Positions 22,866-38,844 of a stretch of DNA of 64,000 bases are shown in pieces; position 1 is the stretch's first letter, and every line of letters starts with the position of its first letter. The stretch lies in the IMG/VR virus record IMGVR_UViG_3300027816_000052, positions 124,001-188,000 of that record. One strand, written 5' to 3'. A program made the translations under genes and the position numbers. The notes beneath the pieces were generated by a model. That model saw nothing but the letters and a program-made list of their open reading frames with translations. It was not told the DNA's origin and did no database searches.

Positions 22866-22886
22866 AATAGAATTATATTAAATCAG

Positions 22887-22916
22887 AATCCCTCAGGTTA
22901 TAGCTTGGGGGATTTT
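22887..22916 (+). terminator. Probable terminator after the SSB gene
   Basis: AATCCCTCAG...CTTGGGGGATTTT imperfect stem followed by Ts. Confidence 0.6.
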
Positions 22917-22939
22917 GCTTTTTTATGATATTTATGGTT

Positions 22940-23656
22940 ATGAAAAAGATTAAATTAACAGAATCAGATTTATATAGGATTGTTAGAAAGGTTCTTCTTG
23001 AGCAAGAGGAAGAAAATAACAGAAGAATTTTTAATGAGAATCCAGAATATTTTAAAACGATTCTTAAAAATGTATTTAAAAATGATTCTAAGAAATTAAC
23101 AAGGTTTTTTAATAAACAATACGATAAGGTTATTATTAATGGAAGTTTGAATTTAGAAGGAGCACCAATTCAATCCTTACCGGATAATCTTTATGTTGGG
23201 GAAAATTTGTATTTAAGTGAAACACCAATTCAATCCTTACCGGATAATCTTTATGTTGGGGGGGAGTTAGATTTATCTTATTGTGAAGAAATTGAAACTT
23301 TACCTGAAACTCTTGAAGTTAAGGGTAATATTGATTTATCCTATTCGTCAATAAAATATTTACCCGATAACTTTAAAGTACCAAAAAACCTATTTTTAGA
23401 TTATTCTAAATTAGAACATTTACCGGATAATCTCACGGTTGGAAATAATTTAATAGTAAGGAGCACACTTATAACAAAACTACCAAATAATTTAAAAGTT
23501 GGTGGTAAATTAAATATCCGCAATACAGAGGTGGAAGAATTACCTGATGATTTAGAAGTAAAATCTCTTATTTTAATAGATTTTACACCATTGTCTTATA
23601 ACTTAGATTTACAAAAGAAATACAAGGAAAAAGGTTTTATACTATATACCAATTAA
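22940..23656 (+). CDS. Leader-tagged leucine-rich-repeat protein LRR-1 (start revised to MKKIK)
   Basis: MKKIKLTESDLYRIVRKVLLEQ leader, then about 7 repeats of 20-21 aa (L.L..T.I..LPDNL.V). Confidence 0.85.
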   Translation: MKKIKLTESDLYRIVRKVLLEQEEENNRRIFNENPEYFKTILKNVFKNDSKKLTRFFNKQYDKVIINGSLNLEGAPIQSLPDNLYVGENLYLSETPIQSLPDNLYVGGELDLSYCEEIETLPETLEVKGNIDLSYSSIKYLPDNFKVPKNLFLDYSKLEHLPDNLTVGNNLIVRSTLITKLPNNLKVGGKLNIRNTEVEELPDDLEVKSLILIDFTPLSYNLDLQKKYKEKGFILYTN

Positions 23657-23721
23657 ATTATCTTATCACAATATGTTGTTTTTTATTGGTTTTTTCTTAT
23701 ATTTTAAGAAAATCTAATAAT

Positions 23722-24714
23722 ATGGCACTTAAGAAAAAAGAAATTACATTAGCGGATATTAAGAATAAATTTTCGACCAAAACAAAATATAAGGAAACCC
23801 AGTTTTATAATTGTGGTGAAGCGTTTTTGGATGCTTGTGGTTTACCGGGACCGGTGATGGGTTCTATAAATTTGTTTATGGGTCATTCAGACACGTCAAA
23901 ATCGACAGCAATGATTTTATCTGCGGTTGATGCACAAAGTAAGGGTCATTTACCCGTATTTATTATTACGGAGAAGAAATTCAGTTGGGAACATGCTATT
24001 GAATTGGGGTTGGACGCACAATTAGATTCAGATGGTTCTTATGTTGGTCAATTTATTTATAATGATTCATTTGATTATGTTGAACAAGCAACCGATTATA
24101 TTAATTCATTATTAGATGCACAAGAAAAGGGGGAGTTACCGTACAATCTATTATTTTGTTTCGACAGTATTGGTTCAATTCCTTGTTTGGCAACATACGA
24201 AGGAAAGGGTGGCGGCATGCATACGGCTAAGGTATTGGCGGATAAGATTGGCATGGGACTTCATTCTAGAATTACTAAATCTAGAAAAGAAGAATATCCG
24301 TATATAAATACTATGGTTGTAATCAACCAAGTTTGGATTGAAATTCCAGATAATCCATATAGTCAACCTGTAGCAAAACCTAAAGGTGGGGAAGCTTTAT
24401 TTTTTTCGGCAGCATTAGTATTTTTATTTGGTAATCATAAAAATTCTGGTGTATCGCACATTACTGCGACAAAAAATGGTAGAACGGTATCATTTGCTAC
24501 AAGAACTAAGATATCAATATTAAAGAATCACATTAATGGTATATCGTTTAAAGATGGTAAAATTATCGCAGTACCTCAAGGGTATATTAAAGACGATAAA
24601 GCAGACATTGATAAATATAAAAAGCAATATTCACAATATTGGAATAAAATATTAGGTGGTGGTGATGATGATATTAATTTAGAAGAAGGTAAAGATGAAT
24701 TATTTGAATCATAA
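23722..24714 (+). CDS. recA: RecA/UvsX-like recombinase
   Basis: P-loop GHSDTSKST, FITEKKF, Walker B FCFDSIGS, VINQVW, PKGGEALFF, KNHING. Confidence 0.85.
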   Translation: MALKKKEITLADIKNKFSTKTKYKETQFYNCGEAFLDACGLPGPVMGSINLFMGHSDTSKSTAMILSAVDAQSKGHLPVFIITEKKFSWEHAIELGLDAQLDSDGSYVGQFIYNDSFDYVEQATDYINSLLDAQEKGELPYNLLFCFDSIGSIPCLATYEGKGGGMHTAKVLADKIGMGLHSRITKSRKEEYPYINTMVVINQVWIEIPDNPYSQPVAKPKGGEALFFSAALVFLFGNHKNSGVSHITATKNGRTVSFATRTKISILKNHINGISFKDGKIIAVPQGYIKDDKADIDKYKKQYSQYWNKILGGGDDDINLEEGKDELFES

Positions 24715-24760
24715 TTTGTTAATAATAACAACTTTTTATAAAATCTAGATATTTATTAAT

Positions 24761-24919
24761 ATGGGAAGAAAGAAAATAACTAACGAAGAAAAAAAACAAA
24801 GTATTTCTATTGCTCTGAAACCGGAGTTATTAGAATATTTTCGCGGACTCCATATTAATCTTTCTTCTCTAATAAATAAATTATTAGAGGATTATAAAAA
24901 TGGAAAAGAAAATATGTAA
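24761..24919 (+). CDS. Small ribbon-helix-helix-like DNA-binding protein (52 aa), not in the ORF track
   Basis: Manual translation MGRKKITNEEKKQSISIALKPELLEYFRGLHINLSSLINKLLEDYKNGKENM; TATTTATT 4 nt upstream; overlaps the start of the next gene. Confidence 0.7.
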   Translation: MGRKKITNEEKKQSISIALKPELLEYFRGLHINLSSLINKLLEDYKNGKENM

Positions 24920-25934
24920 TAAATGTGGAATCGAAGCTCTTATATCGAACCAAGGAAAAGGTTTTTGTGAGACTTGTCGAGTTTTGGACATTAAAGAACA
25001 ACGAAGTCGTAAATATTTTGAAAAAAAAGAGCAAGAGAGGTTAGAGTTATTTTATAGGGATTGTCCGATTTGTGGGAAAGTAATAACCTATAAAACAAGT
25101 AATGGATGTTATAAAGCTAATAAAAAAAACACATCTTGTTTGACTTGTTGTAAAATGGGCGAAAAAAATCCTTTTTATGGTAAAATCCATACCGCTGAAA
25201 GTATGGATAGAATGAAGAAGACCACACTAGAAAGTGAAAAAAGAAAAGACTTTTGGAAAAGACAACAAACACAAGAATTTAGAGATAAATTAAGTGAAAC
25301 TTTAAAGATAAGACAACCAAATAAAGGTAAGGGTTATTATAAAGCGTGGATTAGAGATTATGGGTTAGAAGTTGCAAACCAAATGGTAAAAGAATTTGGT
25401 GATAGAATATCTAAAACAGCTAAAGGTAAACGCTTAGGGATACCACCAAAACACGGGATTGCATGTGGTAACGGATGGTCTGGTTGGTATAAAGAATATT
25501 TCTTTAGAAGTGTTGGTGAGTTAAGTTTTATAATAAATGTGATTGAGAGATTTGGATTTAATGCGATTTCGGCTGAAAGTCAGAAATATAAAGTGCGTTA
25601 TTTTATAGATGGTTTTGAAAGAAATTATTTTCCGGACTTTGTTTTAAATGATAAGTACGTAGTTGAATGTAAACCAAAAAAATTACAAGAAATACCTCAT
25701 AATAAAATTAAGTTTGATGCCGCTAAATTAAAATTCAAAGAAGATGGTTTAATCTTTAAGGTTGTTGACATTCCAATTATTGATTTTAATCTATTATTAG
25801 ATTTACATGATAAGGATTTAATAAAATTTTCTAAAAAAACAAATGAAAAATTTATGGTATACGTTGAAAAGAAAAAAGATATTAAATCTTTTATTGATAA
25901 AATATCTCAGAATATTACTAAACCTTTAACTTAA
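24900..25934 (+). mobile_element. Homing endonuclease with NUMOD3-like motif and TnsA-like PD-(D/E)xK domain
   Basis: Zn-finger CxxC pairs, GEKNPFYGKIHTAES, FRSVGELSF, RNYFPDFVLNDKYVVECKP. Confidence 0.75.
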
Positions 25935-25938
25935 TAAA

Positions 25939-26712
25939 ATGATTCTAAATTATAAAAAACCGCAACCACTTAATTTAGATTCTGTGGTCTTCGTACCAAT
26001 AAGAAAATGTCGAAAATGTGCTGAGATTAAACCGTATTCAGAATTTAGAAAAGAAAAAAATAGAAAATTTGGTATTAGACATATATGTAAAGAATGTAAT
26101 AACATTAGAATAAAAAAATTGAGAGAAAAAAATCCTGAAAAAGTAAGAGAACATGAGAAAAAATGGAGAGAAAAAAATCCTGAAAAAGTAAAGGAAAAAA
26201 ATAAAAGATGGATGAAAAAAAATCCTGAAAAAGCAAAGGAAAAGAATAAAATATGGAGAGAAAAAAATCCTGAAAAAAGAAATCTAATAAATAGAAGATA
26301 TTTAAATAAAAATTTAAATCAAATTATGGAAAGACGTAAAAAAAGAATGGATAAAAACCCCGAATATAAACTAAGAATACTTATGTCATATAGATTAAGT
26401 AAAATGTTTAAACAAAAAAAACTAGCAAAAAATAGCAAAACTCTAGAAATATTAGGAACATCATTTAATAATTTTAAATGTTATCTAGAATCTCAATTTA
26501 ATGACGGAATGACATGGGAAAATCATGGTAAGGTGTGGCAAATTGATCATAAGGTACCGGTATCATATGGAAAAAATGAAGAGGAAATATGTAAGCTAAA
26601 TCATTATACAAATCTTCAACCACTATTCACCTTAGAAAACCAAAAAAAAAGCGATAAACTCCTCCCAGAACACGAAGAGTTATATAAAAAGCTATTAAAT
26701 AGAGAGTTATAA
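25939..26712 (+). mobile_element. HNH-type homing endonuclease
   Basis: CRKC/CKEC, KNPEK repeats, MTWENHG..WQIDHKVP...NHYTNLQPL...NQKKSDK. Confidence 0.85.
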
Positions 26713-26739
26713 TTTTCAAAAAACAAAAAACAAAAAAAC

Positions 26740-27360
26740 ATGAAAATACTCGAATTATTCGCAGGAAGTCGTTCATTCTCAAAGGTAGCAGAAGAACTTG
26801 GTCATCAAACATTTTCAGTTGACTGGGGACCATATGAGAATATTGATTTAAAAATGGACATTAAAGAAATGACCATTAATCATGTTCCTTTTGTACCAGA
26901 TGTTATTTGGTGTTCACCTGATTGCACAACTTATTCAATCGCAGCAATTAGCACACACAGAAATGGTACAGAACCAAAAAGCGAATATGCAAAAGAATGT
27001 GATTTAACAAATCAGCATTTTATTTCTTTAATCAAAGAATGGTTAGTAATTAATCCAAACTTAATCTTCTTTATAGAAAATCCAAGAGGAATGCTAAGAA
27101 AGATGCCATTTATGCAAGAATTTAAGCGACATACTACTTGGTATTGCAAGTATGATGATGAAAGAGCCAAACCCACAGATATTTGGACAAATTCAACAAC
27201 TTGGATACCAAGACCGGTTTGTAAAAATGGTAATAAAGAATGTCATCACCAACCAGCACCAAGGGGTTCAAAAACTGGAACGCAAGGTAGAGGTAATTCG
27301 TATGAGAGAAGTAAAATTCCTTATGAATTATGTTTAGAAATACTTAATAGCATACAATAA
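26740..27360 (+). CDS. Short C5-cytosine DNA methyltransferase-like protein
   Basis: Motif I ELFAGSRS, motif IV WCSPDC, motif VI FIENP; no obvious target-recognition domain. Confidence 0.75.
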   Translation: MKILELFAGSRSFSKVAEELGHQTFSVDWGPYENIDLKMDIKEMTINHVPFVPDVIWCSPDCTTYSIAAISTHRNGTEPKSEYAKECDLTNQHFISLIKEWLVINPNLIFFIENPRGMLRKMPFMQEFKRHTTWYCKYDDERAKPTDIWTNSTTWIPRPVCKNGNKECHHQPAPRGSKTGTQGRGNSYERSKIPYELCLEILNSIQ

Positions 27361-27361
27361 C

Positions 27362-27559
27362 ATGAAACTCTATATTCACGAAGGACCGGGACATTGTGTT
27401 GGTAGTGTTGTTATCGTGGTTTCAGATAATTATGAAACCGCATATGAAATCATTTCAAAACGACTGGATGATATGGGATTAAACAAAGAGAATATTTCAA
27501 TTATAGAAAAAGAAATAATCAATAACGAGATTGTTTTTTCAAAAAGTGGTGATTATTAA
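27362..27559 (+). CDS. Hypothetical protein (65 aa)
   Basis: ORF coupled to the methyltransferase stop. Confidence 0.65.
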   Translation: MKLYIHEGPGHCVGSVVIVVSDNYETAYEIISKRLDDMGLNKENISIIEKEIINNEIVFSKSGDY

Positions 27560-28094
27560 TCTGGAAAATTAAAAAATAATAGGTAAACATCACCATCTCT
27601 AAAATCATCTGAAATTATTACACCATCCATTTCTTCCCAATTTTTTTTACTTAATCTATCAAATTTTGTAATAATTAAAGGTCTTTCTTCACCCCATTTT
27701 GTGGTAATAATTGTATTACCTTCATCATCAATTCCAGTTTTACCTCTTAACATGAAAGGTATTGGATAATCCATATACATTGACCCGTTTTCATAACCTT
27801 CATCTTTTAAATATTTTCTTGCGTTACCAATTGCGTCAAAGGTTTCTGTTGCGGTGAAAAATTTACTATAAACAATTACCCTATCACTTATTGCATAAAC
27901 ACCATTAATATTTGGAAAAACTTCACCAACCTTTTTACCAATAATATCATAAGCTGTTTCATCTTCTTTAAGAACTCGTTTAACTAAATTAATTAAGTCA
28001 GATTCCGTTAATCTTATTATTTTTTTCATAGTGTGTTATTTTAATGTAAATATCTTTAAAAGTAAAAAGCCAAAAAAGTGGTGATTATTAATCT
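27541..28094. repeat. 22-bp direct repeat AAAAAGTGGTGATTATTAATCT at 27541-27562 and 28073-28094
   Basis: Exact match read from the sequence; each copy contains the stop codon of a minus-strand cargo gene. Confidence 0.9.
27556..28029 (-). CDS. Leader-tagged protein of unknown function (157 aa)
   Basis: MKKIIRLTESDLINLVKRVLKE leader; body unrelated to the LRR genes. Confidence 0.8.
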   Translation of the reverse strand: MKKIIRLTESDLINLVKRVLKEDETAYDIIGKKVGEVFPNINGVYAISDRVIVYSKFFTATETFDAIGNARKYLKDEGYENGSMYMDYPIPFMLRGKTGIDDEGNTIITTKWGEERPLIITKFDRLSKKNWEEMDGVIISDDFRDGDVYLLFFNFPD

Positions 28095-28875
28095 CTACTA
28101 ATTCTATATTTTTCTTCATATTTCGCAACCAATTCATCATTATCTTTTAATGGTGTTTCACGAATATAAATTATCCCATTAACATAAAGATTATCCCCTA
28201 AGGATTTAATTGGTGTTCCATTTAACCACAAATCTCCCCCAACACGAAGATTATCCGGTAAGGATTGAATTGGTGTTTCAGTTAAATCCAACCTTCCCTC
28301 AACATGAAGATTATCCGGTAAGGATTGAATTGGTGTTCCTCGTAAATACAAACTTCCCCCAACATGAAGATTATCCGGTAAGGATTGAATTTGCGTTCCT
28401 TCTAAATCCAAATTTCCCTTAACGTCAAGATTATCCGGTAAGGATTGAATTGGTGTTCCATTTAACCACAAACTTCCCCCAACACGAAGATTATCCGGTA
28501 AGGATTGAATTTGTGTTCTTTGTAAATACAAACTTCCCCCAACACGAAGATTATCCGGTAAGGATTTAAGATTTTTGCATCCATATAAATTCAAATATCC
28601 CTCAACATGAAGATTATCCGGTAAGGATTGAATTTGTGTTTTTTCTAAATCCAAACCCCCATTAACAACAATCTCATCATATTTGTTATTAAGATGTTTA
28701 ACAAATCTTTCACCTGATGATGATGTTATAAAAGATGCAAATGCTCCCGGAGAAAATGTAAAACTTCTCTTTTCTTCCTCCTGTTCAAAAAGAACTTGTT
28801 TAATTATCCTATATAAATCTGATTCTGTTAATTTAATCTTTTTCATAACCATAAATATCATTAAAAGTAAAAAGC
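28047..28875. repeat. 24-bp direct repeat TAAATATC[T/A]TTAAAAGTAAAAAGC at 28047-28070 and 28852-28875
   Basis: One mismatch; each copy holds the TATTTA motif upstream of a minus-strand cargo gene. Confidence 0.9.
28088..28846 (-). CDS. Leader-tagged LRR protein LRR-2 (8 repeats plus cap)
   Basis: MKKIKLTESDLYRIIKQVLFEQ leader; G.L.L..T.IQSLPDNL.V repeats with 60/63-bp DNA period. Confidence 0.9.
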   Translation of the reverse strand: MKKIKLTESDLYRIIKQVLFEQEEEKRSFTFSPGAFASFITSSSGERFVKHLNNKYDEIVVNGGLDLEKTQIQSLPDNLHVEGYLNLYGCKNLKSLPDNLRVGGSLYLQRTQIQSLPDNLRVGGSLWLNGTPIQSLPDNLDVKGNLDLEGTQIQSLPDNLHVGGSLYLRGTPIQSLPDNLHVEGRLDLTETPIQSLPDNLRVGGDLWLNGTPIKSLGDNLYVNGIIYIRETPLKDNDELVAKYEEKYRISRD

Positions 28876-28933
28876 ACGTCTTTAATAAACAAGATTCATA
28901 TGATATTTATGGTTTAAATAGACACCCCAAGTC

Positions 28934-29482
28934 ATGAATCAAAGACGACTAATAAAAAAAATATTATTGGAATATACCAATGAGCAAAAAGATGAATATC
29001 AAGACATTGCGCTTGATAATTTATCAAAAATTGGTGATTTTAATAGATTACGTGAAATTGATAAATTAACGTTGCTTGGAAGAAGTGGTGACACACAAAA
29101 GCTAAAACGATTAATGTTATCAAGAATTTATGAAGAAAAGGGTAATACATTTGGAATGCTTGAAATAAAGGTTAAGATAAAGGATTTAAAGGAACAAGCG
29201 GTTAAAAGTAAATTTTCAGAAGAGTTTGCGGGTGAAGAGGGGTATTTACTTCCCTCTATACAGTATTTTGATGACATTCCCTATGTTAGTGTTAAATTTA
29301 AACGTTTTGAACCAAGCGATAAAGCACTTGGTGGTGGTAATTATGAAAGCAGAGTTATACCTCTAGCTAATGTCTATCCTTTGTCTTATGAAAAAATCGA
29401 CGATGAATTTGTTAAATATCAACAAAGAGTTGAAAGAGAAAGAAAAGAATTTAAAGATAGATTTGGACTTGATGAGTTTTGA
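28934..29482 (+). CDS. Hypothetical protein with leader-like N-terminus (RRLIKKILLEY)
   Basis: ORF preceded by ATGATATTTATGGTT, shared with the LRR genes. Confidence 0.75.
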   Translation: MNQRRLIKKILLEYTNEQKDEYQDIALDNLSKIGDFNRLREIDKLTLLGRSGDTQKLKRLMLSRIYEEKGNTFGMLEIKVKIKDLKEQAVKSKFSEEFAGEEGYLLPSIQYFDDIPYVSVKFKRFEPSDKALGGGNYESRVIPLANVYPLSYEKIDDEFVKYQQRVERERKEFKDRFGLDEF

Positions 29483-29511
29483 TTGTTATATTTTAGCAAA
29501 AATATAAAACA

Positions 29512-29955
29512 ATGAATACTTTCGGAACATCTATTATGGTTCAATATAATAAGTTATTTAAAGATAATTTTGAACCACCTCATTTAATTATTATTAAAAA
29601 TAAAGCAATTAAGTTTTATGAAAAAGAGTTGGAAAAACCAAATAAAAAATGGTTTGGTTGGGGATTTTTTAATGATGAAAATGAAAAAATCAATCTTCTA
29701 GATAAAATTTTTAATTCGAAACCGAATACAAAACTTCTTACACTAAAAAAACCCTCACATCCGGATTGTGATGTTGAATTTATTTATTTTGGGAATAATA
29801 TGAAGTATGAAATTTTAAAAAGCGTCCCCGTTGATTTAAATACACCAACAAATGAAATGTCTGAAATTCAAATAAATTTAACTAAAGAAAAGCAACCAGA
29901 TATTCATTATAAGTTTAGTGTAAATGAAGAAGGTGAATTTGTTGAATTTAATTAA
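29512..29955 (+). CDS. Hypothetical protein (147 aa)
   Basis: ORF with A-rich start context. Confidence 0.7.
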   Translation: MNTFGTSIMVQYNKLFKDNFEPPHLIIIKNKAIKFYEKELEKPNKKWFGWGFFNDENEKINLLDKIFNSKPNTKLLTLKKPSHPDCDVEFIYFGNNMKYEILKSVPVDLNTPTNEMSEIQINLTKEKQPDIHYKFSVNEEGEFVEFN

Positions 29956-29963
29956 TTTTATTA

Positions 29964-30959: not shown

Positions 30960-30974
30960 AAACAATATAAAAAA

Positions 30975-31421
30975 ATGAAAGAGCAAGATTTAACAAAAAT
31001 GGAGTTTTTAATTAAACTTAATAACAACGTTGTAATTCAGAGATATTTTAATGTTAAAGATTATAATCCCCAAGCAAGACGTTCTATGGAATTATATGAA
31101 TATATTAAAGATGTCGCAGAACTGCTTCAGAGGAAGTTAAAAATTAAGACGGTAACATATATGTTGGATAATTATTATGAGATTGAGGAGAACCCTCAAA
31201 TTATGGAAACTTCAAATACCGATGGTCCCGAAACATTTAACATCTATGTTAAGATAAATGATGAGACAATTTGTCACAGAGTATTTGATGCTAAAGTATA
31301 TCCTCCGAAGGTTAGATATACGATGGATGTACGACCAGAAGCAAAAAACGTCTTAAGAAATTTAACTGACATTTTTTCTGAGAAAAATTTTAATAACGAG
31401 TACCTTGGAATTATCCTATAA
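30975..31421 (+). CDS. Hypothetical protein (148 aa)
   Basis: ORF between exonuclease and helicase. Confidence 0.75.
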   Translation: MKEQDLTKMEFLIKLNNNVVIQRYFNVKDYNPQARRSMELYEYIKDVAELLQRKLKIKTVTYMLDNYYEIEENPQIMETSNTDGPETFNIYVKINDETICHRVFDAKVYPPKVRYTMDVRPEAKNVLRNLTDIFSEKNFNNEYLGIIL

Positions 31422-31457
31422 TCATAGTATTTAGAAGATACAAACTAACAAACACAC

Positions 31458-33908
31458 ATGGGTAAAGATAAAAATTTCGAGTATCTCGGACAAACATTTC
31501 AGCTTCAATTGATTAACCAAATTATCATTGACAAAATATTCGGCTCATCAATTATTGACGTTATGGAAGTCTCTTATTTCGAGAATAAGTATTTTAAAAT
31601 TGTTGTTCAATTTATTAAGGAACATTATGGAAAATATAATGAAATTCCTTCATTTACAACTTTAAAACAAATTATTAAATCTGAGTTAGCACAGGATTTT
31701 CTTGTAAAGGTTGCAATTGATACCTTGGAATCAATAAAAAATGTGTCAACTGACGGTGCTGAGTTTGTACAAGAAAAAGCTTTAAAGTTTTGTAAACAAC
31801 AAGAACTGAAAAAAGTAATGACTAAAGCACAAAAAATTATCGATGGTGGTGAATTTGAAAATTATGACCAAGTTGAATCTTTGGTTAGGAACGCACTTCA
31901 GGTTGGTGAATTGGATAAGGGTCAGATAGATGTTTTTGACGATACTGAGGGCGTTTTAAGTGAGGATTTCAGACATCCGATTGCGATGGGTATTAAGGGT
32001 ATTGATAAGCTCTTAAAGGGTGGTTTAGCGAGGGGTGAAATTGGTGTTATTCTCGCCCCGACAGGGGTGGGCAAAGCCCAAAATGTTAGTGAACCAATTT
32101 TAACACCAACAGGTTGGACCGAAATAGGAAATATTAAACTTGGTGATAAAATAATTGGTTCCGATGGTAATGAACAATATGTGATTGGCGTTTATCCGCA
32201 AGGTCAACGTCCAATTTATAAAATTGAATTTACTGATGATACACATACTTTTTGTGATGCAGAACATTTATGGTATGTTAATACATTAAACATGCGTACA
32301 AGAAAAACACGCATAAAAAATGTGAATAACTATGCTCCGAATTATGGGTATAAAGTGATTAAAACTAGCGATATGTTAGTTGATATAAAAAAACGAGGTA
32401 GATATAATTATAGACTACCTATTGTTAATCCTATTAATTTTAACGAAAAAGATATATTAATTAATCCTTATTTATTGGGTATTTTATTGGGGGATGGTTA
32501 TTTATCTGCAAAAGATAGTATTACTTTAAGTACTAAAGATGATGAAATATTTGATAATATTTCTAATTTAAATCTACACACATCATTTTCTGAATACCAT
32601 AGGGACACTAAAACAATTAAAGTTGTTCGCATTAAAAATGTTATTAAACCTCATTTAACTCATTATGGTTTACTTGGTATGAAATCTGACCAAAAGTTTA
32701 TACCGAAAGATTATATTTTTAATTCAGTAAATAATAGACTTGAATTATTGAGAGGATTAATGGATACTGATGGTTATGCGGATAAAAGAGGTTGTTGTCA
32801 ATTTACAACTGTTTCAGAACAATTAGCAAAAGATGTTAGAGAAATTGTTCTTTCTTTAGGTGGTACAGCTAAAATTAAAACAAAAATACCTAAATATAAG
32901 TATAAAGGTGAGGTAAAGGATGGTAAAATGGCTTATACTGTAACAATATCGTTTGCAAATAATATTGTTCCGTTTAAGTTGTTAAGAAAAGTAAATAGGT
33001 TCGTAAAAAGAAAAAAATATATTGAACAAAAATATATTAAATCAATAAACTATTCTCACGATGAAGAAGCTGTTTGCATAAAAGTATCAAATCCTGATGA
33101 ATTATATGTTACTAGAGATTATGTGTTAACACATAATACAACCGTAATGACAAAAATTGCAAATCACGCATATAATTTGGGTTTCAATGTCCTTCAAATC
33201 TTCTTTGAAGACAATCCAAAAATCATTCAGCGCAAGCATTTTACGATGTGGACCGGAATTAAACCCGATGATTTGACCGCAAATAAGGAAGAAGTTTTGG
33301 AAACGGTTAAAGAGTTGAGAAGTACCTTACCCAATAAATTGATTCTAAAGAAGTTACCTTCAGAATCATTAACCATGTCAAACATTAAAAATCAGGTAAG
33401 AAAAATAATTTCTGAGGGCGTTAAGATTGATTTAATTTGCTTGGATTATATCGATTGTGTATTACCAGAAAAATTCAATGGTGATGAATGGAAGGGTGAG
33501 GGTTCGGTTATCAGAGCATTTGAAGCAATGTGTCATGAATTGGATATTGTTGGATGGACCGCGACCCAAGGTAATCGATCCAGTATTTCAGCAGATGTTG
33601 TAACAACTGACCAAATGGGTGGTAGCATTAAAAAAGCACAAGTTGGTCACGTTATCATATCAATTGCTAAATCTCTTGAACAAAAAGACCAAAAACTTGC
33701 GACAATTGCAATTACAAAATCAAGAATTGGTTCTGATGGTGTGGTGTTTGCAAACTGCAAATTTGACAATGAAATGCTTATTATTGATACAGAGGAATCA
33801 AAAACATTATTAGGTCATGAAAAAGAGGTTGAAGAAATTAATGAAATGAATGCAAAAAAACGATTAGGTGAATTACAATCTAATAAAAAAAGAACAACAA
33901 TAAATTAA
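31458..33908 (+). CDS. dnaB: DnaB-like replicative helicase, intein-interrupted
   Basis: GGLARGEIGVILAPTGVGK|TT Walker A, CLDYIDC, WTATQGNR, IAITKSRIG. Confidence 0.9.
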   Translation: MGKDKNFEYLGQTFQLQLINQIIIDKIFGSSIIDVMEVSYFENKYFKIVVQFIKEHYGKYNEIPSFTTLKQIIKSELAQDFLVKVAIDTLESIKNVSTDGAEFVQEKALKFCKQQELKKVMTKAQKIIDGGEFENYDQVESLVRNALQVGELDKGQIDVFDDTEGVLSEDFRHPIAMGIKGIDKLLKGGLARGEIGVILAPTGVGKAQNVSEPILTPTGWTEIGNIKLGDKIIGSDGNEQYVIGVYPQGQRPIYKIEFTDDTHTFCDAEHLWYVNTLNMRTRKTRIKNVNNYAPNYGYKVIKTSDMLVDIKKRGRYNYRLPIVNPINFNEKDILINPYLLGILLGDGYLSAKDSITLSTKDDEIFDNISNLNLHTSFSEYHRDTKTIKVVRIKNVIKPHLTHYGLLGMKSDQKFIPKDYIFNSVNNRLELLRGLMDTDGYADKRGCCQFTTVSEQLAKDVREIVLSLGGTAKIKTKIPKYKYKGEVKDGKMAYTVTISFANNIVPFKLLRKVNRFVKRKKYIEQKYIKSINYSHDEEAVCIKVSNPDELYVTRDYVLTHNTTVMTKIANHAYNLGFNVLQIFFEDNPKIIQRKHFTMWTGIKPDDLTANKEEVLETVKELRSTLPNKLILKKLPSESLTMSNIKNQVRKIISEGVKIDLICLDYIDCVLPEKFNGDEWKGEGSVIRAFEAMCHELDIVGWTATQGNRSSISADVVTTDQMGGSIKKAQVGHVIISIAKSLEQKDQKLATIAITKSRIGSDGVVFANCKFDNEMLIIDTEESKTLLGHEKEVEEINEMNAKKRLGELQSNKKRTTIN
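32076..33137 (+). mobile_element. Ala-start (class 3-type) intein with LAGLIDADG endonuclease in the helicase Walker A (354 aa)
   Basis: Begins AQNVSEPILTPTGW, ends VLTHN, +1 Thr; EHLW, AVCIKV, LTHN give the WCT triad; LLGILLGDG and LLRGLMDTDG motifs. Confidence 0.9.
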
Positions 33909-33926
33909 TAAAAAATATATAATAAA

Positions 33927-36878
33927 ATGGACAGTAAATTTAAAGAAATTACCCCGCCTTGGGGTGAAATTGGTTATATAACATTTAAGAGAACATACGC
34001 TAGAAGATTAAAAGAAGATGACCCTTTGTCAAAAACTGAAGAGTTTTGGCAAGTAATTGAAAGAGAATTAGAGGCATCAGAAAAACAATTAAATGTTGGG
34101 TTTACAGAAGACGAGAAAAAAAGATATGCGGAATTACGCATGAACCTTAAGTTTTCAACTGCTGGTAGATTTATGTGGCAATTGGGGACTAAAACGGTTG
34201 ATAGATTAGGTTTACCATCTTTACAAAACTGTGCTTTTACCGTTGTTAATTCACCAATAAGACCATTTACTTGGTGTTTTGAAATGTTAATGTTAGGTAG
34301 CGGTGTTGGTTACAATATTCAAAAACATAATGTGTATCAATTACCAAAGTTGAAAAATAAAATTAAAATTGAAAGAAAAGACACAAATGATGCGGATTTT
34401 ATTGTTCCGGATAGCAGAGAAGGGTGGGTTAAACTTTTGGGTAAAGTACTTAAAGCACATTTTTATGGTGGTGAGGGTTTTACATATTCTACTGTTTGTA
34501 TTAGGTCTAAAGGTGCGGTAATAAAAGGGTTCGGGGGAACCGCATCTGGACCCGAAGATTTATGTTGGGGTATAAGTGAAATTAACAAAATATTAAATTC
34601 ACGCTCAAATAAAAAATTAAGACCTATTGATTGTCTTGATATTATGAATATTATCGGTAATATTGTGGTCGCCGGAAACGTCCGAAGATCGGCACAAATC
34701 GCAATTGGTGATTTTGATGATATTGAATTTTTAAAAGCAAAAAGATGGGATTTATATAAAATTCCAAACTGGAGAGCGATGAGTAATAATTCAATCGTTG
34801 CGCCAGAAAATATTGATGATTTACCTAAAGAATTTTGGGATACTTATAACCAAGGCGAACCATATGGATTGATTAATTTAGAATTAGCTAGAAGTGTTGG
34901 TAGAACTGGAGAAAATCAATATCCGGACCCTGAAGTTGAAGGATTTAATCCTTGCAAACCCTTAAATTCGCTTATTTTAACAAATAAGGGATATATTACG
35001 TTTGAACAAGCACTTAATGAGGATGAGCTTACCGTTTTAGGAATTGATGGTCAGTGGAAAAAAGCAACAAAACCATTTAAAACAGGGGAAAATAGGGTTG
35101 TGAATAGAATTTTATTGTCTAATGGTTCTTATCTATATGGTACCGATAATCATCTTCATATGGATAGAGATGGTAATTGGGTTAGAATGGATAAATTAGA
35201 AATTGGTAATCAATTAAAGTGGGAAAATAAACCAATATATACGTCTTTTGATATAGATAATGAAGAAGATTATAAATTAGGTACTTTCGCGGGATGGGTT
35301 CAGGGTGATGGATGGTATAGTAAACGATTAGATAATGTTGGTTATACGGTCGGTATGTGTTTTGGTATTAATGAAATGGATGTCGTTTCTTATTTTGAAC
35401 AAATGTTAAATGTAAAGACAAAACCTCATGAACAAAAACCAAACACATGTTTATATTTTTCATCGCATAGAAATGATTTATCAAAATCATTATCTGATAT
35501 TGGAATGCCAACTAATAAAATGGACTTAAAATGGTTGTATGGAAAATCTAAATCATTTAAACTTGGTTTTATTCGAGCTATTTTCACCGCTGACGGCTCA
35601 GTTAGAAAAATGAATAATGTTGAACTTTATTCTGTTAATAGAAATATTTTGGAAGTTGTTTCGACAATTTTAAACGAATTTGGTATTCATAATACAATAA
35701 CAACACATAATAATGGTCGAGTTTATGTTGGAAAAGATGGAAAAATGAGAAATAATTCCACATGTTTTAAAATTAATGTATATGCTGGTCAATTTAAACA
35801 GATTGGGTTTTTATCTAAATTTAAAAATGAGTTATTAGAAAAACATGAAATTAAACCGATTTATAGATACAAAGATTATGTTACAGTAATCGATATCGAA
35901 CCAGAATATTCGGTAGAGGATGTTTATGATATAACTGTCAATGATGAAACACACGCATTTTATGATACTGGGGTTGTAACACATAATTGTGCAGAACAAT
36001 CATTAGCTAATTTTGAGACCTGTTGTCTAGCTGAAGTTTATCTACCAAACATTGAAACATATGATCAATTATTGGAAGCCTTAACATATGCTTATAGAAT
36101 GAATAAACACTCATTGGCATTAAAATGTTCTTTAAAAGAAACTGAAGAAATTGTTAATCGAAATATGAGAATGGGTATTGGAATGACCGGTGTTTTACAG
36201 GCAACCGAAGAACAAAGGTCTTGGTTAAGTTCTGCATATGAATGGTTAAGAAAATATGATGTGGAATATTCAAAAAAACATGGTTTTCCAAATAGTATAA
36301 AACTTACCACTATTAAGCCATCCGGTACACTTTCGCTTTTAGCAGGAGTAACACCGGGAGTACATCCAAATCCTGCTGGACCGTATTATATTAGAAGAAT
36401 TAGAATTTCATCACAATCTACATTAATTGATGTATGTAGGAAACATGGATTTCCAATAGAATACCAAAGAAATTATGATGGTACTGAGGACAAAACCACA
36501 ATGGTAATATCTTTCCCATGTAAACTTCCGGATGAAACACCTGTAGCATCAAATTATACTTGGAAAGAACAATTAGATATGGTAAGAAGAATGCAAGCTG
36601 AATGGTCGGATAATTCGGTTAGCTGCACTGTTTATTATAAAAAAGAAGATATTGATGATATTAAAAATTACTTACGTGAACATTTTAAACATGAAATAAA
36701 AACTGTATCATTCCTTCTATATTATGGACATGGTTTTGATCAAGCACCATATGAAACAATAACAAAAGAACAATATGATGATATGATAAAAAATATTAAA
36801 CAAATAACATCTATTGAGGTTAAAGAAGATGAGTTTACAATTATGGATTGTGATACCGGTGCTTGTCCAATAAAATAA
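33927..36878 (+). CDS. nrdJ: Class II (B12-dependent) ribonucleotide reductase, intein-interrupted
   Basis: LQNCAF, GNVRRSAQI, NP|CAEQ, TCCLAE, TIKPSGTLSLL, C-terminal CDTGACPIK; monomeric RTPR-like layout. Confidence 0.9.
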   Translation: MDSKFKEITPPWGEIGYITFKRTYARRLKEDDPLSKTEEFWQVIERELEASEKQLNVGFTEDEKKRYAELRMNLKFSTAGRFMWQLGTKTVDRLGLPSLQNCAFTVVNSPIRPFTWCFEMLMLGSGVGYNIQKHNVYQLPKLKNKIKIERKDTNDADFIVPDSREGWVKLLGKVLKAHFYGGEGFTYSTVCIRSKGAVIKGFGGTASGPEDLCWGISEINKILNSRSNKKLRPIDCLDIMNIIGNIVVAGNVRRSAQIAIGDFDDIEFLKAKRWDLYKIPNWRAMSNNSIVAPENIDDLPKEFWDTYNQGEPYGLINLELARSVGRTGENQYPDPEVEGFNPCKPLNSLILTNKGYITFEQALNEDELTVLGIDGQWKKATKPFKTGENRVVNRILLSNGSYLYGTDNHLHMDRDGNWVRMDKLEIGNQLKWENKPIYTSFDIDNEEDYKLGTFAGWVQGDGWYSKRLDNVGYTVGMCFGINEMDVVSYFEQMLNVKTKPHEQKPNTCLYFSSHRNDLSKSLSDIGMPTNKMDLKWLYGKSKSFKLGFIRAIFTADGSVRKMNNVELYSVNRNILEVVSTILNEFGIHNTITTHNNGRVYVGKDGKMRNNSTCFKINVYAGQFKQIGFLSKFKNELLEKHEIKPIYRYKDYVTVIDIEPEYSVEDVYDITVNDETHAFYDTGVVTHNCAEQSLANFETCCLAEVYLPNIETYDQLLEALTYAYRMNKHSLALKCSLKETEEIVNRNMRMGIGMTGVLQATEEQRSWLSSAYEWLRKYDVEYSKKHGFPNSIKLTTIKPSGTLSLLAGVTPGVHPNPAGPYYIRRIRISSQSTLIDVCRKHGFPIEYQRNYDGTEDKTTMVISFPCKLPDETPVASNYTWKEQLDMVRRMQAEWSDNSVSCTVYYKKEDIDDIKNYLREHFKHEIKTVSFLLYYGHGFDQAPYETITKEQYDDMIKNIKQITSIEVKEDEFTIMDCDTGACPIK
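34953..35987 (+). mobile_element. Class 1 intein with LAGLIDADG endonuclease at the RNR NP|C catalytic site (345 aa)
   Basis: Begins CKPLNSLILTNKG, ends VVTHN, +1 Cys; GTDNH block B; GWVQGDG and RAIFTADG motifs. Confidence 0.92.
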
Positions 36879-36936
36879 TTAAATTTTTTTAATTATTTTA
36901 AATGATAACATTAAAAAAAAATAATGAAAAATAGAA

Positions 36937-37146
36937 ATGAAAAACGATTGGATAACAGAACAATACATTAAAGAAACATTGCAAAATAAAGATTCTGATT
37001 TTTATGTCAATTCGGATGGTAAAAAAGTTATGACCGAAAATTTTCATAAAAAACGAGGTTATTGTTGTGGTTCCGGTTGTTTACATTGTCCTTATGAACC
37101 AAGAGCGCAAAAAGGAAATACAAAATTAAAAAATCCCCAATCATAA
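36937..37146 (+). CDS. Small Cys-rich protein (DUF5522-like)
   Basis: DFYVNSDGKKVMTENFHKKRGYCCGSGCLHCPY. Confidence 0.75.
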   Translation: MKNDWITEQYIKETLQNKDSDFYVNSDGKKVMTENFHKKRGYCCGSGCLHCPYEPRAQKGNTKLKNPQS

Positions 37147-37160
37147 GTTGGGGATTTTTT
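37128..37160. terminator. Bidirectional terminator between convergent genes
   Basis: AAAAATCCCCAA-TCATAAG-TTGGGGATTTTT perfect inverted repeat with A/T tails on both sides. Confidence 0.85.
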
Positions 37161-37165
37161 TAATT

Positions 37166-38302
37166 TTATACATAAAACCTATAACCCTTTACCTGATATT
37201 TCAAAATCAAATCAATATCATTATTTAACGGAGTTCCACCGATTGAAATAACACCTACAACCTTAAGATTATCCGGTAAGGATTGAATTGGTGTTCCTAC
37301 TAAACTCAAATCTCCCCCAACATGAAGATTATCCGGTAAGGATTTAAGATTTTTGCATCCATATAAATTCAAATTTCCCCCAACATGAAGATTATCCGGC
37401 AAGGATTGGATTGGTGTATCATATAACTCCAAATTTTTCTTAACATGAAGATTATCCGGTAAGGATTTAATTGGTGTTTCATTTAACCACAAATCTCCCC
37501 CAACATGAAGATTATCCGGTAAGGATTGAATTGGTGTTCCTACTAAACTCAAATCTCCCCCAACATGAAGATTATCCGGTAAGGATTTAAGATTTTTGCA
37601 TCCATATAAATTCAAATTTCCCCCAACATGAAGATTATCCGGCAAGGATTGGATTGGTGTATCATATAACTCCAAATTTTTCTTAACATGAAGATTATCC
37701 GGTAAGGATTTAATTGGTGTTTCATTTAACCACAAATCTCCCCCAACATGAAGATTATCCGGTAAGGATTGAATTGGTGTTCCTACTAAACTCAAATCTC
37801 CCCCAACATGAAGATTATCCGGTAAGGATTGAATTGGTGTTCCTACTAAACTCAAATTTCCCCCAACATGAAGATTATCCGGTAAGGATTGAATTGGTGT
37901 TCCTACTAAACTCAAACTTCCCCCAACACGAAGATTATCCGGTAAGGATTGAATTGGTGTTCCTCTTAAATACAAACTTCCCCCAACATGAAGATTATCC
38001 GGTAAGGATTGAATTGGTGTTCCTTGTAAATACAAACTTCCCCCAACATGAAGATTATCCGGTAATGATTGAATTTGTGTATCTCTTAAATCCAAATCCC
38101 CATTAATAATAACCTTATCATATTGTTTATTAAAAACTCTTGTTAATTTCTCAGAATCATTTCTAAATACATTTTCAAGAATCGTTTTAAAATATTCTGG
38201 ATTCTTATTGAAGATTCTTCTGTTATTTTCTTCCTCTTGCTCAAGAAGAACCTTTCTAACAATCCTATATAAATCTGATTCTGTTAATTTAATCTTTTTC
38301 AT
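37166..38302 (-). CDS. Leader-tagged LRR protein LRR-3 (14 repeats plus cap)
   Basis: Leader almost identical to LRR-1; 14 units of 20-21 aa. Confidence 0.9.
   Translation of the reverse strand: MKKIKLTESDLYRIVRKVLLEQEEENNRRIFNKNPEYFKTILENVFRNDSEKLTRVFNKQYDKVIINGDLDLRDTQIQSLPDNLHVGGSLYLQGTPIQSLPDNLHVGGSLYLRGTPIQSLPDNLRVGGSLSLVGTPIQSLPDNLHVGGNLSLVGTPIQSLPDNLHVGGDLSLVGTPIQSLPDNLHVGGDLWLNETPIKSLPDNLHVKKNLELYDTPIQSLPDNLHVGGNLNLYGCKNLKSLPDNLHVGGDLSLVGTPIQSLPDNLHVGGDLWLNETPIKSLPDNLHVKKNLELYDTPIQSLPDNLHVGGNLNLYGCKNLKSLPDNLHVGGDLSLVGTPIQSLPDNLKVVGVISIGGTPLNNDIDLILKYQVKGYRFYV
37265..38100. repeat. Coding tandem repeat, 60/63-bp unit, with an exact 243-bp higher-order duplication
   Basis: Core AAGATTATCCGGTAAGGATT; identical blocks begin at 37265, 37508 and 37751. 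Confidence 0.92.
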
Positions 38303-38374
38303 AACCATAAATATTATACCATTTCTAAAAATTGTTATTCTACTATATTTATTGTTAACGAATCACTATTTTAA

Positions 38375-38836: not shown

Positions 38837-38844
38837 TTATTAAA

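What the first reader, a model, noticed from the sequence alone, without database searches (positions are those of the whole stretch)
22929..38313. Three dispersed LRR genes exchanging near-identical repeat modules with variable beta-strand faces
Seen: the 20/21-aa units have an invariant IQSLPDNL.V backbone with near-identical DNA, while the exposed xLxLxx positions vary (SLYLRG, DLWLNE, NLELYD, DLSLVG, RLDLTE). The same modules (LNLYGCKNLKSLPDNL, SLYLRGTPIQSLPDNLHV, DLWLN.TPIKSL) occur in both LRR-2 and LRR-3. LRR-1 is chimeric: its N-terminus and first two units are near-identical to LRR-3, and the rest are old and diverged. Established: LRR concave faces are binding surfaces, and lamprey VLRs diversify by LRR cassette assembly. 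Inference: a recombination-driven repertoire of variable binders, possibly targeting host defence proteins.
Basis: partly seen in the sequence, partly recalled or inferred. Interest (0 to 1): 0.75.

Follow-up and report, generated by a model that had tools for sequence, protein, structure and literature searches.

The report
Phage family of variable LRR proteins
The three genes belong to an eleven-copy family in a 256-kb freshwater phage: small leucine-rich-repeat proteins whose scaffold DNA stays nearly identical between copies while the exposed strand residues are driven apart by selection, which is the signature of a repertoire of binding proteins, although what they bind is unknown.

Summary
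The window lies in a 256-kb T4-like freshwater phage contig. LRR1, LRR2 and LRR3 are three of eleven paralogs. Each has a promoter-like motif, a shared 25-residue N-terminal helix, a helical cap, 3-14 units of 20/21 residues and a C-cap. The units are a leucine-rich-repeat subtype whose only close solved relative is Vibrio FlrP (E 2e-26; rmsd 1.5 A).

In 62 homogenised units the backbone codons are nearly fixed even at synonymous sites. Codons 2, 4 and 6 (less so 7, 18, 20) alternate with the buried leucines and are hypervariable. They hold 76% of the differences between nearest units, 94 non-synonymous to 6 synonymous.

Dispersed paralogs share exact tracts up to 189 nt in mosaic order. Near-identical relatives (0-3 SNPs in 7-12 kb) differ only by whole-unit indels. 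No reverse transcriptase is present, and every copy is a complete gene.

So recombination plus diversifying selection is supported. Programmed VLR-like assembly and host-defence targets are not shown. The motif also precedes structural genes. The shared helix ends in L-x-E in a phage with a gp21-like protease, which hints at late expression and possibly capsid packaging. That part is inference.

The parts
22925..23656 (+). LRR1. The conserved start (MKKIK) is at 22940. Leader helix plus acidic stretch, 22940-23014. N-cap runs to 23140. Seven units, 23141-23563. C-cap, 23564-23656. The gene is chimeric: units 1-2 are homogenised and units 3-7 are diverged.
   Evidence: In relative L089 one unit (23163-23222) is absent, with only 3 SNPs in 11.7 kb.
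22884..22917 (+). Strong intrinsic-terminator-like hairpin between the gp32-like SSB gene and LRR1. It makes LRR1 its own transcription unit.
   Evidence: 15-bp stem, T tail; SSB identified.
22927..22935 (+). GATATTTAT promoter-like motif, starting 13 nt upstream of the MKKIK start codon of LRR1.
   Evidence: The same motif lies 22-43 nt upstream of the tail sheath (41 nt), gp25-like, adaptor, tail-fibre and head-decoration genes.
27556..28029 (-). 157-aa gene just downstream of LRR2 on the same strand. It has the same kind of N-terminal helix (MKKIIRLTESDL...LKE) on an unrelated alpha/beta domain, plus its own GATATTTAC motif.
   Evidence: no known fold match.
28088..28861 (-). LRR2. Conserved start at 28846. 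Leader plus N-cap, 28661-28861. Eight units, 28178-28660. C-cap, 28088-28177. The promoter-like motif is at 28851-28859.
   Evidence: The ortholog in L089 is identical except for 1 SNP.
37128..37160 (.). Bidirectional terminator-like hairpin between the end of the RNR gene and the end of LRR3.
37166..38308 (-). LRR3. Conserved start at 38302. Leader plus N-cap, 38102-38308. Fourteen units, 37256-38101. C-cap, 37166-37255. The promoter-like motif is at 38304-38314.
   Evidence: The gene sits between RNR and gp25, which are 195-784 nt apart in 12 more distant relatives.
37265..37830 (-). Perfect tandem duplication of 243 bp (four units): a 323-nt exact repeat at offset 243, so that units 7-9 equal units 11-13 and unit 10 equals unit 6.
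   Evidence: It is absent in relative L009, which has 0 mismatches in 7,428 nt. The unitig unique to the duplicated segment has 1.9x, 1.7x and 1.4x the flank depth in three DNA runs.

Best explanation
The three genes are members of an eleven-copy paralogous family of small, soluble leucine-rich-repeat proteins. The family is encoded by an uncultured 256-kb T4-like freshwater phage.

Each gene is a self-contained cassette. It consists of a promoter-like ATATTTAT motif, a shared 25-residue N-terminal helix with an acidic tail, a helical N-cap, 3-14 FlrP-type units of 20/21 residues, and a C-cap.

Shown:
- The arrays change by gain and loss of whole units. This is what unequal exchange or slippage between adjacent units would produce.
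- The arrays also change by short gene-conversion patches of 60-190 nt copied between dispersed paralogs. This keeps the scaffold DNA nearly identical.
- The residues that alternate with the buried leucines in the two short strands of each unit are diversified by positive selection. These are positions 2, 4 and 6, and to a lesser degree 7, 18 and 20.

Inferred:
- The diversified stripe is a ligand-binding surface, so the family is a repertoire of binders with different specificities. The binders would act on bacterial or phage macromolecules inside the infected cell, because there is no signal peptide.
- The binding partners are unknown.

Weaker inference:
- The genes belong to the late, structural-gene regulon.
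- The shared helix, which ends in L-x-E, is a targeting or processing signal read by the T4-type head-maturation system. If so, the proteins could travel in the capsid and enter the next cell with the DNA.
For: Family and anatomy.

Fold: AF2 pLDDT 86. FlrP (PDB 8z5u) matches at E 2e-26 with rmsd 1.5 A and TM 0.85. FlrP is a solved LRR solenoid.

Scaffold homogenised even at synonymous sites: pS of the backbone is 0.053, against pN of 0.55 at codons 2, 4 and 6.

On a minimum spanning tree of 53 distinct units, 129 of 170 differences fall in six codons that make up 30% of the unit (p 8e-35). Codon changes there are 94 non-synonymous to 6 synonymous.

The same positions vary in 70 + 50 metagenomic homologs.

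Mosaic example: paralog G unit 12 equals LRR2 unit 8 (97 nt exact). It is flanked by tracts identical to paralog F (93 and 119 nt). Unit sharing between LRR3 and paralog D is non-colinear.

Relatives differ only by unit indels.

No hydrophobic N-terminal stretch is present.

Late-type motif. Absent upstream of SSB, DnaB, RNR and FEN.

A gp21-like protease and a gp23-like capsid protein with an I-N-E/A-A-S site are present.

The leader is a low-confidence, detached helix in two different cargo proteins.
Against: No binding partner is known and none was tested.

Exposure of the variable residues rests on the alternation pattern, DSSP strands of a predicted model and general LRR geometry, not on coordinates I could measure.

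The 243-bp copy-number difference could be an assembly collapse of a perfect repeat. Only the 60-bp LRR1 indel is robust.

Population-level variation could not be read from the public runs.

Lateness rests on a motif shared with structural genes, not on expression data. The motif also sits closer to the start codon in the LRR genes: it begins 13 nt upstream, against 22-30 nt in most motif-bearing genes (9-43 nt overall).

The complex prediction of leader with protease gave no answer.

Pfam LRR models do not reach their cut-offs.
Confidence: 0.6

Rival explanations
1. Virion-surface adhesins or receptor-binding modules. The shared N-terminal helix anchors each LRR protein to a common docking site on the tail, baseplate or head. 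The diversified faces then recognise different host surface structures, giving a host-range repertoire.
For: The same promoter-like motif precedes structural genes. A conserved N-terminus with a variable distal part is the usual layout of interchangeable phage receptor-binding proteins (established knowledge). LRR or beta-helix domains are proposed as host-recognition modules in phage Goslar. LRR3 sits next to the baseplate genes.
Against: The proteins are small (160-380 aa), with no predicted trimerisation domain. Most copies lie among replication or unknown genes, not in the tail module. The same helix heads unrelated small globular proteins. No similarity to known fibre anchors was found.
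Confidence: 0.17
2. Relaxed constraint rather than selection for diversity. The arrays are recently amplified repeats homogenised by recombination, and the variable positions are simply the only ones free to drift. The paralogs would then be functionally redundant.
For: Exposed residues of any solenoid tolerate change. Backbone pN/pS is about 1.1 at very low divergence. Some paralogs are identical between relatives.
Against: pN at codons 2, 4 and 6 is about ten times the synonymous divergence of the backbone. It is also three times the synonymous divergence of the same codons. Changes run 94 non-synonymous to 6 synonymous. Drift cannot push non-synonymous change above the neutral rate. The residues favoured (Y, W, D, N, S, R) are typical of binding surfaces.
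Confidence: 0.1
3. Programmed diversification: a diversity-generating retroelement, or VLR-like cassette assembly, rewrites the variable codons.
For: Variation is confined to defined codons in an otherwise fixed DNA backbone. Many variable codons have the form NNT.
Against: No reverse transcriptase was found in 256 kb (the contig is about 85% complete). Invariant codons contain many unchanged adenines, for example AAT 62/62, CAA 57/62 and ACA 53/62. All copies are complete genes, not silent cassettes. Independent assemblies from different samples give identical sequences.
Confidence: 0.02
4. Assembly artefact: the mosaics and copy-number differences come from mis-assembly of short reads across repeats.
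For: Contigs in four runs and in several IMG/VR records break inside the arrays. LRR3 holds a perfect 323-nt repeat that short reads cannot count.
Against: LRR1, LRR2, the first ten units of LRR3 and paralog K are reproduced with 0-3 mismatches in independent assemblies. The 60-bp LRR1 indel lies between units only 88% alike, so it is resolvable by reads. k-mer depth of the duplicated LRR3 segment is about 2x the flanks in two DNA runs.
Confidence: 0.03

Closest known systems
FlrP, the leucine-rich-repeat protein of the Vibrio polar flagellar motor (PDB 8Z5U/8Z5W/8Z60; bioRxiv 10.64898/2025.12.04.692373)
   Same: It has the same 20-residue unit, G-x-L-x-L-x-x-T-x-I-x-x-L-P-x-x-L-x-V. Sequence E-value is 2e-26, identity 34%, and the model superposes at 1.5 A over 164 columns. 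It is a small single-domain solenoid.
   Different: FlrP has a Sec signal peptide and sits in the periplasm on the flagellar rod as one conserved gene. The phage proteins have no signal peptide, and carry an N-terminal helix plus helical cap. They occur as eleven diversified paralogs.
LRR domains of type III secreted effectors (IpaH/SspH/SlrP, YopM, XopL)
   Same: These are short bacterial-type LRR units with an L-P motif that serve as substrate-recognition modules. Weak profile and fold matches were found.
   Different: Scores are far below the family cut-offs (20-35 bits against 450-1113). Superposition is poor, at rmsd 4-10 A. There is no NEL ligase domain and no secretion signal, and the host is a phage rather than a pathogen chromosome.
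Lamprey variable lymphocyte receptors and engineered repebodies
   Same: An LRR scaffold with an invariant framework and diversified concave-face residues. Weak sequence matches were found.
   Different: VLRs are assembled somatically from incomplete cassettes by a deaminase-linked process. Here all copies are complete germ-line genes that diversify on an evolutionary timescale.
T4 internal proteins (IPI, IPII, IPIII) with their capsid targeting sequence
   Same: Several unrelated small proteins of one T4-like phage share a short N-terminal sequence ending in (L/I)-x-E. The phage has gp21-like protease and gp23-like capsid genes. T4 IPI* is an injected inhibitor of a host restriction enzyme (textbook knowledge).
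   Different: There is no sequence similarity to the T4 leader. Packaging and cleavage are untested, and the leader here is longer (about 25 residues).
Expanded repeat-protein families of large viruses and mobile elements (ankyrin, FNIP and LRR families of giant viruses; ankyrin genes of Wolbachia phage WO); survey of viral LRRs by Matsushima et al. 2021, cited in PMC10945359
   Same: Many paralogs of a repeat-protein binder are scattered over a large viral genome, with short LRR units.
   Different: Those cases concern eukaryote-facing viruses or symbiont phages. A lytic-type T4-like phage of free-living freshwater bacteria with eleven homogenised LRR genes has not, to my knowledge, been described.

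Membership tests
Leucine-rich repeat superfamily | Tandem 20-30-residue units carrying L-x-x-L-x-L-x-x-(N/C/T)-x-L | tested here: met
   Units of 20/21 aa carry L3-x-L5-x-x-T8-x-I10-x-x-L13-P14. The 21-aa variant has Cys in the Asn position.
Leucine-rich repeat superfamily | Right-handed solenoid with one parallel sheet, and matches to solved LRR structures | tested here: met
   AF2 pLDDT is 86, with one strand pair per unit. All Foldseek top hits are LRR proteins at probability about 1.0.
Leucine-rich repeat superfamily | Pfam LRR models above the gathering score | tested here: not met
   The best match is LRR_EndoS at 17.9-18.3 bits against a cut-off of 27.9. The subtype is poorly covered by Pfam.
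FlrP (flagellar rod LRR protein) | Significant full-domain sequence and structural similarity | tested here: met
   E 2e-26; rmsd 1.5 A; TM 0.85 by target.
FlrP (flagellar rod LRR protein) | Sec signal peptide and periplasmic location | tested here: not met
   The N-terminus is a charged amphipathic helix followed by E-Q-E-E-E, with no hydrophobic stretch. FlrP has a signal peptide at M1-A19.
FlrP (flagellar rod LRR protein) | Binding to FlgC/FlgG/FliF of the rod | not testable with these tools
   The host is unknown and no partner sequences are available.
Diversity-generating retroelement target | Reverse transcriptase plus a template repeat nearby | tested here: not met
   PF00078 is absent from the 256-kb record, while the control genomes gave hits.
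Diversity-generating retroelement target | Variation restricted to template adenines | tested here: not met
   Adenines in the backbone codons AAT, CAA, ACA and GAT are invariant.
VLR-type cassette assembly | An incomplete expressed gene plus silent partial cassettes | tested here: not met
   Ten of the eleven copies are seen with a start codon, leader, caps and stop. The eleventh is cut only by the contig end.
NEL/IpaH-type or Xop-type LRR effectors | Family-specific profile above cut-off and an effector domain (NEL ligase etc.) | tested here: not met
   NCBIfam scores are 16-35 bits against cut-offs of 450-1113. There is no domain beyond the LRR and its caps.
T4-type capsid-targeted internal proteins | The same short N-terminal sequence on unrelated cargo proteins of one phage | tested here: met
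   The leader HMM hits eleven LRR paralogs and two non-LRR ORFs at E < 1e-11. Weaker variants occur on further small ORFs. The cargo fold of the 157-aa protein is unrelated.
T4-type capsid-targeted internal proteins | The leader ends in the (L/I)-x-E site of a gp21-type prohead protease encoded by the phage | tested here: inconclusive
   L-L-E/Q, L-K-E/D and I-N-E/Q are present in the leaders. A Peptidase_S77 homolog is present at E 5e-23. The capsid protein has I-N-E/A-A-S. Cleavage itself is not shown, and the complex prediction gave no answer.
T4-type capsid-targeted internal proteins | Presence in the mature capsid and ejection into the host | not testable with these tools
   This needs virion proteomics.

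The most novel reading that the evidence does not exclude
A giant T4-like phage packages a diversified repertoire of LRR binders into its capsid by means of a common N-terminal targeting helix. The head protease removes the helix at L-x-E. The phage then injects the binders with its DNA to neutralise variable host defence proteins. This would be a counter-immunity repertoire built on the same scaffold, and evolving by the same rules, as the immune receptors of plants and animals.
Probability: 0.15. Interest if true: 0.85.

Novelty: new variant of a known kind. Interest (0 to 1): 0.58.

Why it matters
Repeat-protein repertoires with a fixed frame and selected variable faces are the classic solution for recognising many targets. 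Examples are plant R genes, VLRs, internalins and TAL effectors. Finding the same evolutionary signature in eleven genes of a lytic-type phage of free-living bacteria points to an unexplored class of phage specificity factors.

The subtype is abundant. 6,188 cluster representatives match at E <= 1e-3, and dozens of virus-only clusters exist, almost all unnamed. A function assigned here would therefore annotate thousands of proteins.

The very regular 20-residue module with six defined variable positions is also an attractive natural template for engineered binders.

If the leader proves to be a capsid-targeting signal, it would extend the T4 internal-protein paradigm to a large, evolvable cargo family.

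Tried and rejected
DGR: rejected. There is no RT, and the adenines in the backbone codons are invariant.

Population polymorphism from public runs: the 24 runs found are Logan contigs, and in all four runs laid the contigs stop at 37292 and resume at 38285. Array length per molecule therefore cannot be read. Only k-mer depth was usable.

Cultured-phage relatives: megablast of 17 kb found nothing. tblastn found only the LRR gene of Edwardsiella phage Edno5 at 45% identity. The leader and the 157-aa leader protein have no match in cultured phages.

Pfam, PHROGs and NCBIfam give no family above cut-off for the LRR proteins.

Complex prediction of the leader (residues 1-48) with the gp21-like protease returned 'no answer'. 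It is not used as evidence either way.

The fold of the 157-aa leader protein has no PDB match.

The conserved C-terminal domain on longer LRR homologs from other contigs has no Pfam or PHROG match.

I first read the partial LRR3 in L010 as a one-unit deletion. Alignment shows only two mismatches at the contig end, so I dropped that reading as ambiguous.

The host could not be assigned. There are no tRNAs in the window, and the nearest cultured phages (Flavobacterium, Microcystis) are only 26-27% identical in a baseplate protein.


Full report
WHAT THE WINDOW IS. The window is bases 124001-188000 of a 256,029-bp IMG/VR virus record, classed as linear and about 85% complete. GC content is about 30%. 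The record carries these genes:
- a gp32-like SSB, a 5'-3' exonuclease, a DnaB-like helicase and a class II ribonucleotide reductase, the last two each with a LAGLIDADG intein;
- gp25-like and gp6-like baseplate wedge genes;
- a tail sheath, tail fibre and head-tail adaptor;
- a Peptidase_S77 (T4 gp21-like) prohead protease;
- a gp23-like capsid protein.

It is therefore an uncultured T4-like jumbo myophage. Runs that hold it are freshwater metagenomes and metatranscriptomes, plus samples labelled 'fungus metagenome'. The nearest cultured phages infect Flavobacterium and Microcystis, at only 26-27% identity in a baseplate protein. The host is unknown.

THE OBSERVATION. Splitting them on the L-P-D-N-L anchor gives 7, 8 and 14 units of 20 residues. 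A 21-residue variant carries Cys where LRRs usually have Asn. TRF reports period-60 arrays in all three and a period-243 array in LRR3.

The family is larger than three. A search of the whole record and a motif scan find eleven paralogs. In genome coordinates they are at about 2-622 (cut by the contig start; the ORF listed starts at 119), 635-1114, 26441-27148, 42873-43697, about 64.7-65.1 kb, 91139-91900, 116421-117539, 146925-147656 (LRR1), 152088-152861 (LRR2), 161166-162308 (LRR3) and 226947-227534.

All share one plan: a leader (M-K-K-I-K-L-T-E-S-D-L-Y-R-I-V-R-K-V-L-L-E-Q-E-E-E), one of two N-cap types, 3-14 units and a helix-strand C-cap.

FOLD. No Pfam LRR model reaches its cut-off. LRR2 nevertheless matches one solved protein strongly: the 'LRR protein' chain of PDB 8Z5U/8Z5W/8Z60, at E 2e-26. 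This chain is FlrP, a periplasmic LRR solenoid bound to the rod of the Vibrio polar flagellar motor.

An AlphaFold2 model of LRR2 without an alignment has pLDDT 86, and above 90 through the repeats. Each unit has two short strands, at L3-x4 and at x18-V19. Foldseek puts FlrP first (rmsd 1.5 A, TM 0.85 by target, 34% identity). Every other hit is also an LRR protein but superposes poorly, at rmsd 4-10 A.

So this is a genuine LRR of a distinct FlrP-like subclass. The phage proteins lack FlrP's signal peptide.

WHERE THE VARIATION LIES. I took 62 homogenised 20-residue units from the eleven paralogs. Positions 3, 5, 10, 13, 16, 17 and 19 are essentially invariant. Positions 2, 4 and 6 carry 2.5-3.3 bits of entropy, and positions 7, 18 and 20 carry 1.5-1.9 bits.

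The variable positions alternate with the conserved hydrophobic ones along L17-x-V19-x-G1-x-L3-x-L5-x. Their side chains must therefore point away from the core. In an LRR the x-L-x-L-x strand lines the concave face (established LRR geometry). I could not measure solvent exposure from coordinates.

The same positions vary in 185 distinct units from 70 leader-type metagenomic homologs, and in 286 distinct units from 50 others. The preferred residues are D, N, S, Y, W, R and E.

SELECTION VERSUS HOMOGENISATION. Backbone codons are fixed even at synonymous sites: TTA 62/62, AAT 62/62, ATT 60/62, TTG 60/62 and CTT 59/62.

Nei-Gojobori proportions are as follows:
- backbone: pS 0.053, pN 0.059;
- codons 2, 4 and 6: pS 0.18, pN 0.55.

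On a minimum spanning tree of 53 distinct units (46 edges with 6 or fewer differences), 129 of 170 nucleotide differences fall in the six variable codons, which are 30% of the unit (binomial p 8e-35). Codon changes there are 94 non-synonymous to 6 synonymous.

The near absence of synonymous divergence shows that the scaffold is young or continually homogenised. The tenfold excess of non-synonymous change at defined exposed codons is what diversifying selection produces.

A DGR is excluded. There is no reverse transcriptase in the record, and backbone adenines never vary.

EXCHANGE BETWEEN PARALOGS. Dispersed paralogs share exact tracts of up to 189 nt. Nine 60-nt units recur identically, five of them in different genes.

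The order is mosaic. In paralog G, nt 745-837 equal paralog F (93 nt). Nt 807-903 equal LRR2 unit 8 (97 nt). Nt 899-1017 again equal F (119 nt). This is a one-unit patch.

Paralog D shares unit 6 with LRR3 unit 6, and unit 8 with LRR3 unit 3. The order is reversed between the two genes.

The two N-cap types pair consistently with C-cap types, yet interior units cross between the two subfamilies.

Its first 261 nt are 92% identical to LRR3. Units 1-2 are 92-95% identical to homogenised units elsewhere. Units 3-7 are only 57-65% identical to anything.

RELATIVES.
- An ENA contig (L089) aligns to window 16934-28742 with 3 mismatches and one gap: exactly 60 bp, one unit of LRR1. The neighbouring units are only 88% alike, so this indel is not an assembly collapse.
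- An IMG/VR contig (L009) aligns to 34132-41802 with 0 mismatches and one gap of 243 bp, four units of LRR3.
- The LRR3 segment concerned is a perfect tandem duplication, a 323-nt exact repeat, so a collapse in L009 cannot be excluded. However, the unitig whose 31-mers occur only in the two copies has 1.9x, 1.7x and 1.4x the depth of single-copy flanks in three DNA runs. The two-copy form is therefore real in at least two of them.
- A relative with 93% identical flanks (L011) has a paralog of the other N-cap type, with different units, at the LRR3 locus.
- Paralog K is 100% identical in a 102-kb relative.
- In twelve more distant relatives the RNR and gp25 genes are 195-784 nt apart, against 1,497 nt here. 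LRR3 is thus a lineage-specific insertion.

In short, whole-unit changes in the arrays are the only structural differences between genomes that otherwise differ by 0-3 point changes per 7-12 kb.

LIMITS OF THE READ DATA. All runs offered are k=31 contigs. In four runs the contigs stop at 37292 and resume at 38285, with short fragments in between. Several IMG/VR contigs, and the window's own contig, begin or end inside family members. Within-population variation in array order and number remains untested.

EXPRESSION AND THE LEADER (inference). Every paralog has (G/A/T)ATATTTAT(G/A) beginning 13 nt before the conserved start codon. The same motif lies 9-43 nt (mostly 22-30 nt) upstream of 55 ORFs. 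These include the tail sheath, the gp25-like wedge, the head-tail adaptor, a tail fibre, a virion-type peptidoglycan hydrolase and a head-decoration-like protein. It is not found upstream of the SSB, helicase, RNR or exonuclease genes.

LRR1 is preceded by a strong terminator, and LRR3 is followed by a bidirectional one. These are consistent with independent cassettes.

The leader also heads unrelated proteins: window 27556-28029 and genome 207543-207944 at E below 1e-11. Looser variants (I-x-I/L-T-E-x-Q/D-L ... L/I/V-x-E) occur on about ten further small ORFs. It is conserved as a motif in the metagenomic family of the 157-aa protein.

In both AF2 models the leader is a low-confidence helix detached from the confident domain.

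It ends in L-L-E/Q (or L-K-E/D, I-N-E/Q). T4's gp21 protease cleaves after (L/I)-x-E, and T4 internal proteins share a short N-terminal capsid-targeting sequence ending in such a site (textbook knowledge). This phage has a gp21 homolog, and its capsid protein has I-N-E/A-A-S at residues 58-64.

These facts make late expression likely and capsid packaging possible, but nothing here demonstrates either. The complex prediction gave no answer.

HOW WIDESPREAD. A word-indexed search found 508 homologs, nearly all unnamed metagenome proteins, and 70 of the best 120 carry the same leader. An exhaustive HMMER search found 6,188 cluster representatives at E <= 1e-3 and 466 at E <= 1e-30. The ESM Atlas lists many virus-only clusters.

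Among long homologs the same LRR subtype is fused to ToxN plus SpoVG, to a PcfJ-like domain and to an amidoligase domain. By my recollection, these domains are typical of mobile-element conflict proteins.

In the literature held here, phage LRR proteins are mentioned only in passing: Edno5 gene 47 (PMC6372524), a vibriophage tail-module ORF (PMC10945359) and Goslar DUF7941 proteins (bioRxiv 10.64898/2026.04.21.720040). I found no description of a homogenised multigene LRR family in a phage.

VERDICT. The functional part, that the targets are host defence proteins, is an open hypothesis, and the VLR-like mechanism does not apply.

It is a new variant of a known kind: a repeat-protein binder repertoire under concerted evolution and diversifying selection, in an unusual carrier. 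I found no broken genes and left out no steps.

Noticed in passing
window 38344-38353 and many other sites; genome-wide list: An AT-rich motif, (N)ATATTTAT(N), lies 9-43 nt (mostly 22-30 nt) upstream of the start codons of 55 ORFs. These include the tail sheath, gp25-like wedge, adaptor, tail fibre and head-decoration genes, but not the replication genes. It is a candidate late promoter of this phage group.
   Followed up: partly
window 31458-33908 and 33927-36878: Both the DnaB-like helicase and the class II ribonucleotide reductase are interrupted by LAGLIDADG-type inteins (Pfam LAGLIDADG_3, Hom_end, Intein_splicing).
   Followed up: partly
window 40688-42128: This segment of about 1.4 kb is absent in relatives L011 and L012, whose alignments jump from about 40688 to about 42128. 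At least one small ORF within the segment (40828-41178) is therefore missing from them. A leader-type ORF starts inside the segment, at about window 41175 (L009:6801-7427).
   Followed up: no
window 26113-26299: A 45-bp tandem repeat encodes K-W-R-E-K-N-P-E-K-like motifs inside ORF 25939-26712. The neighbouring ORF 24900-25934 has a NUMOD3 motif and may be a homing-endonuclease-like gene.
   Followed up: no
genome 17647, 67557-68423, 87716, 165175 (window 41175), 207543, 225346, 246508: About ten further small ORFs start with a looser version of the same N-terminal helix, I-x-(I/L)-T-E-x-(Q/D)-L ... (L/I/V)-x-E. Several also carry the late-type motif. This may be a common targeting or processing signal.
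   Followed up: partly
genome 26441-27148 and 63455-65134: There are two atypical paralogs. One replaces the C-cap with three K-W-...-R-G-x-A-N repeats. The other is in frame with a 410-residue upstream ORF that contains a Cys/Lys-rich C-G-R...Y-P-K-C-R segment.
   Followed up: no
P0148, P0147, P0143 (metagenome proteins): The same LRR subtype occurs fused to a ToxN-type toxin domain plus SpoVG, to a PcfJ-like domain and to an amidoligase domain. A further set of 350-400-aa phage proteins joins it to a conserved unnamed C-terminal domain of about 150 aa.
   Followed up: partly
window 14644-21036: A 2,130-residue ORF with no obvious repeats lies just upstream of the finding. It is 100% conserved in relative L089. 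Its function was not examined.
   Followed up: no
runs X5, X12: Metatranscriptome libraries from freshwater hold the phage region at depths similar to the DNA runs. This could mean active infection in situ or DNA carry-over, and it was not resolved.
   Followed up: no
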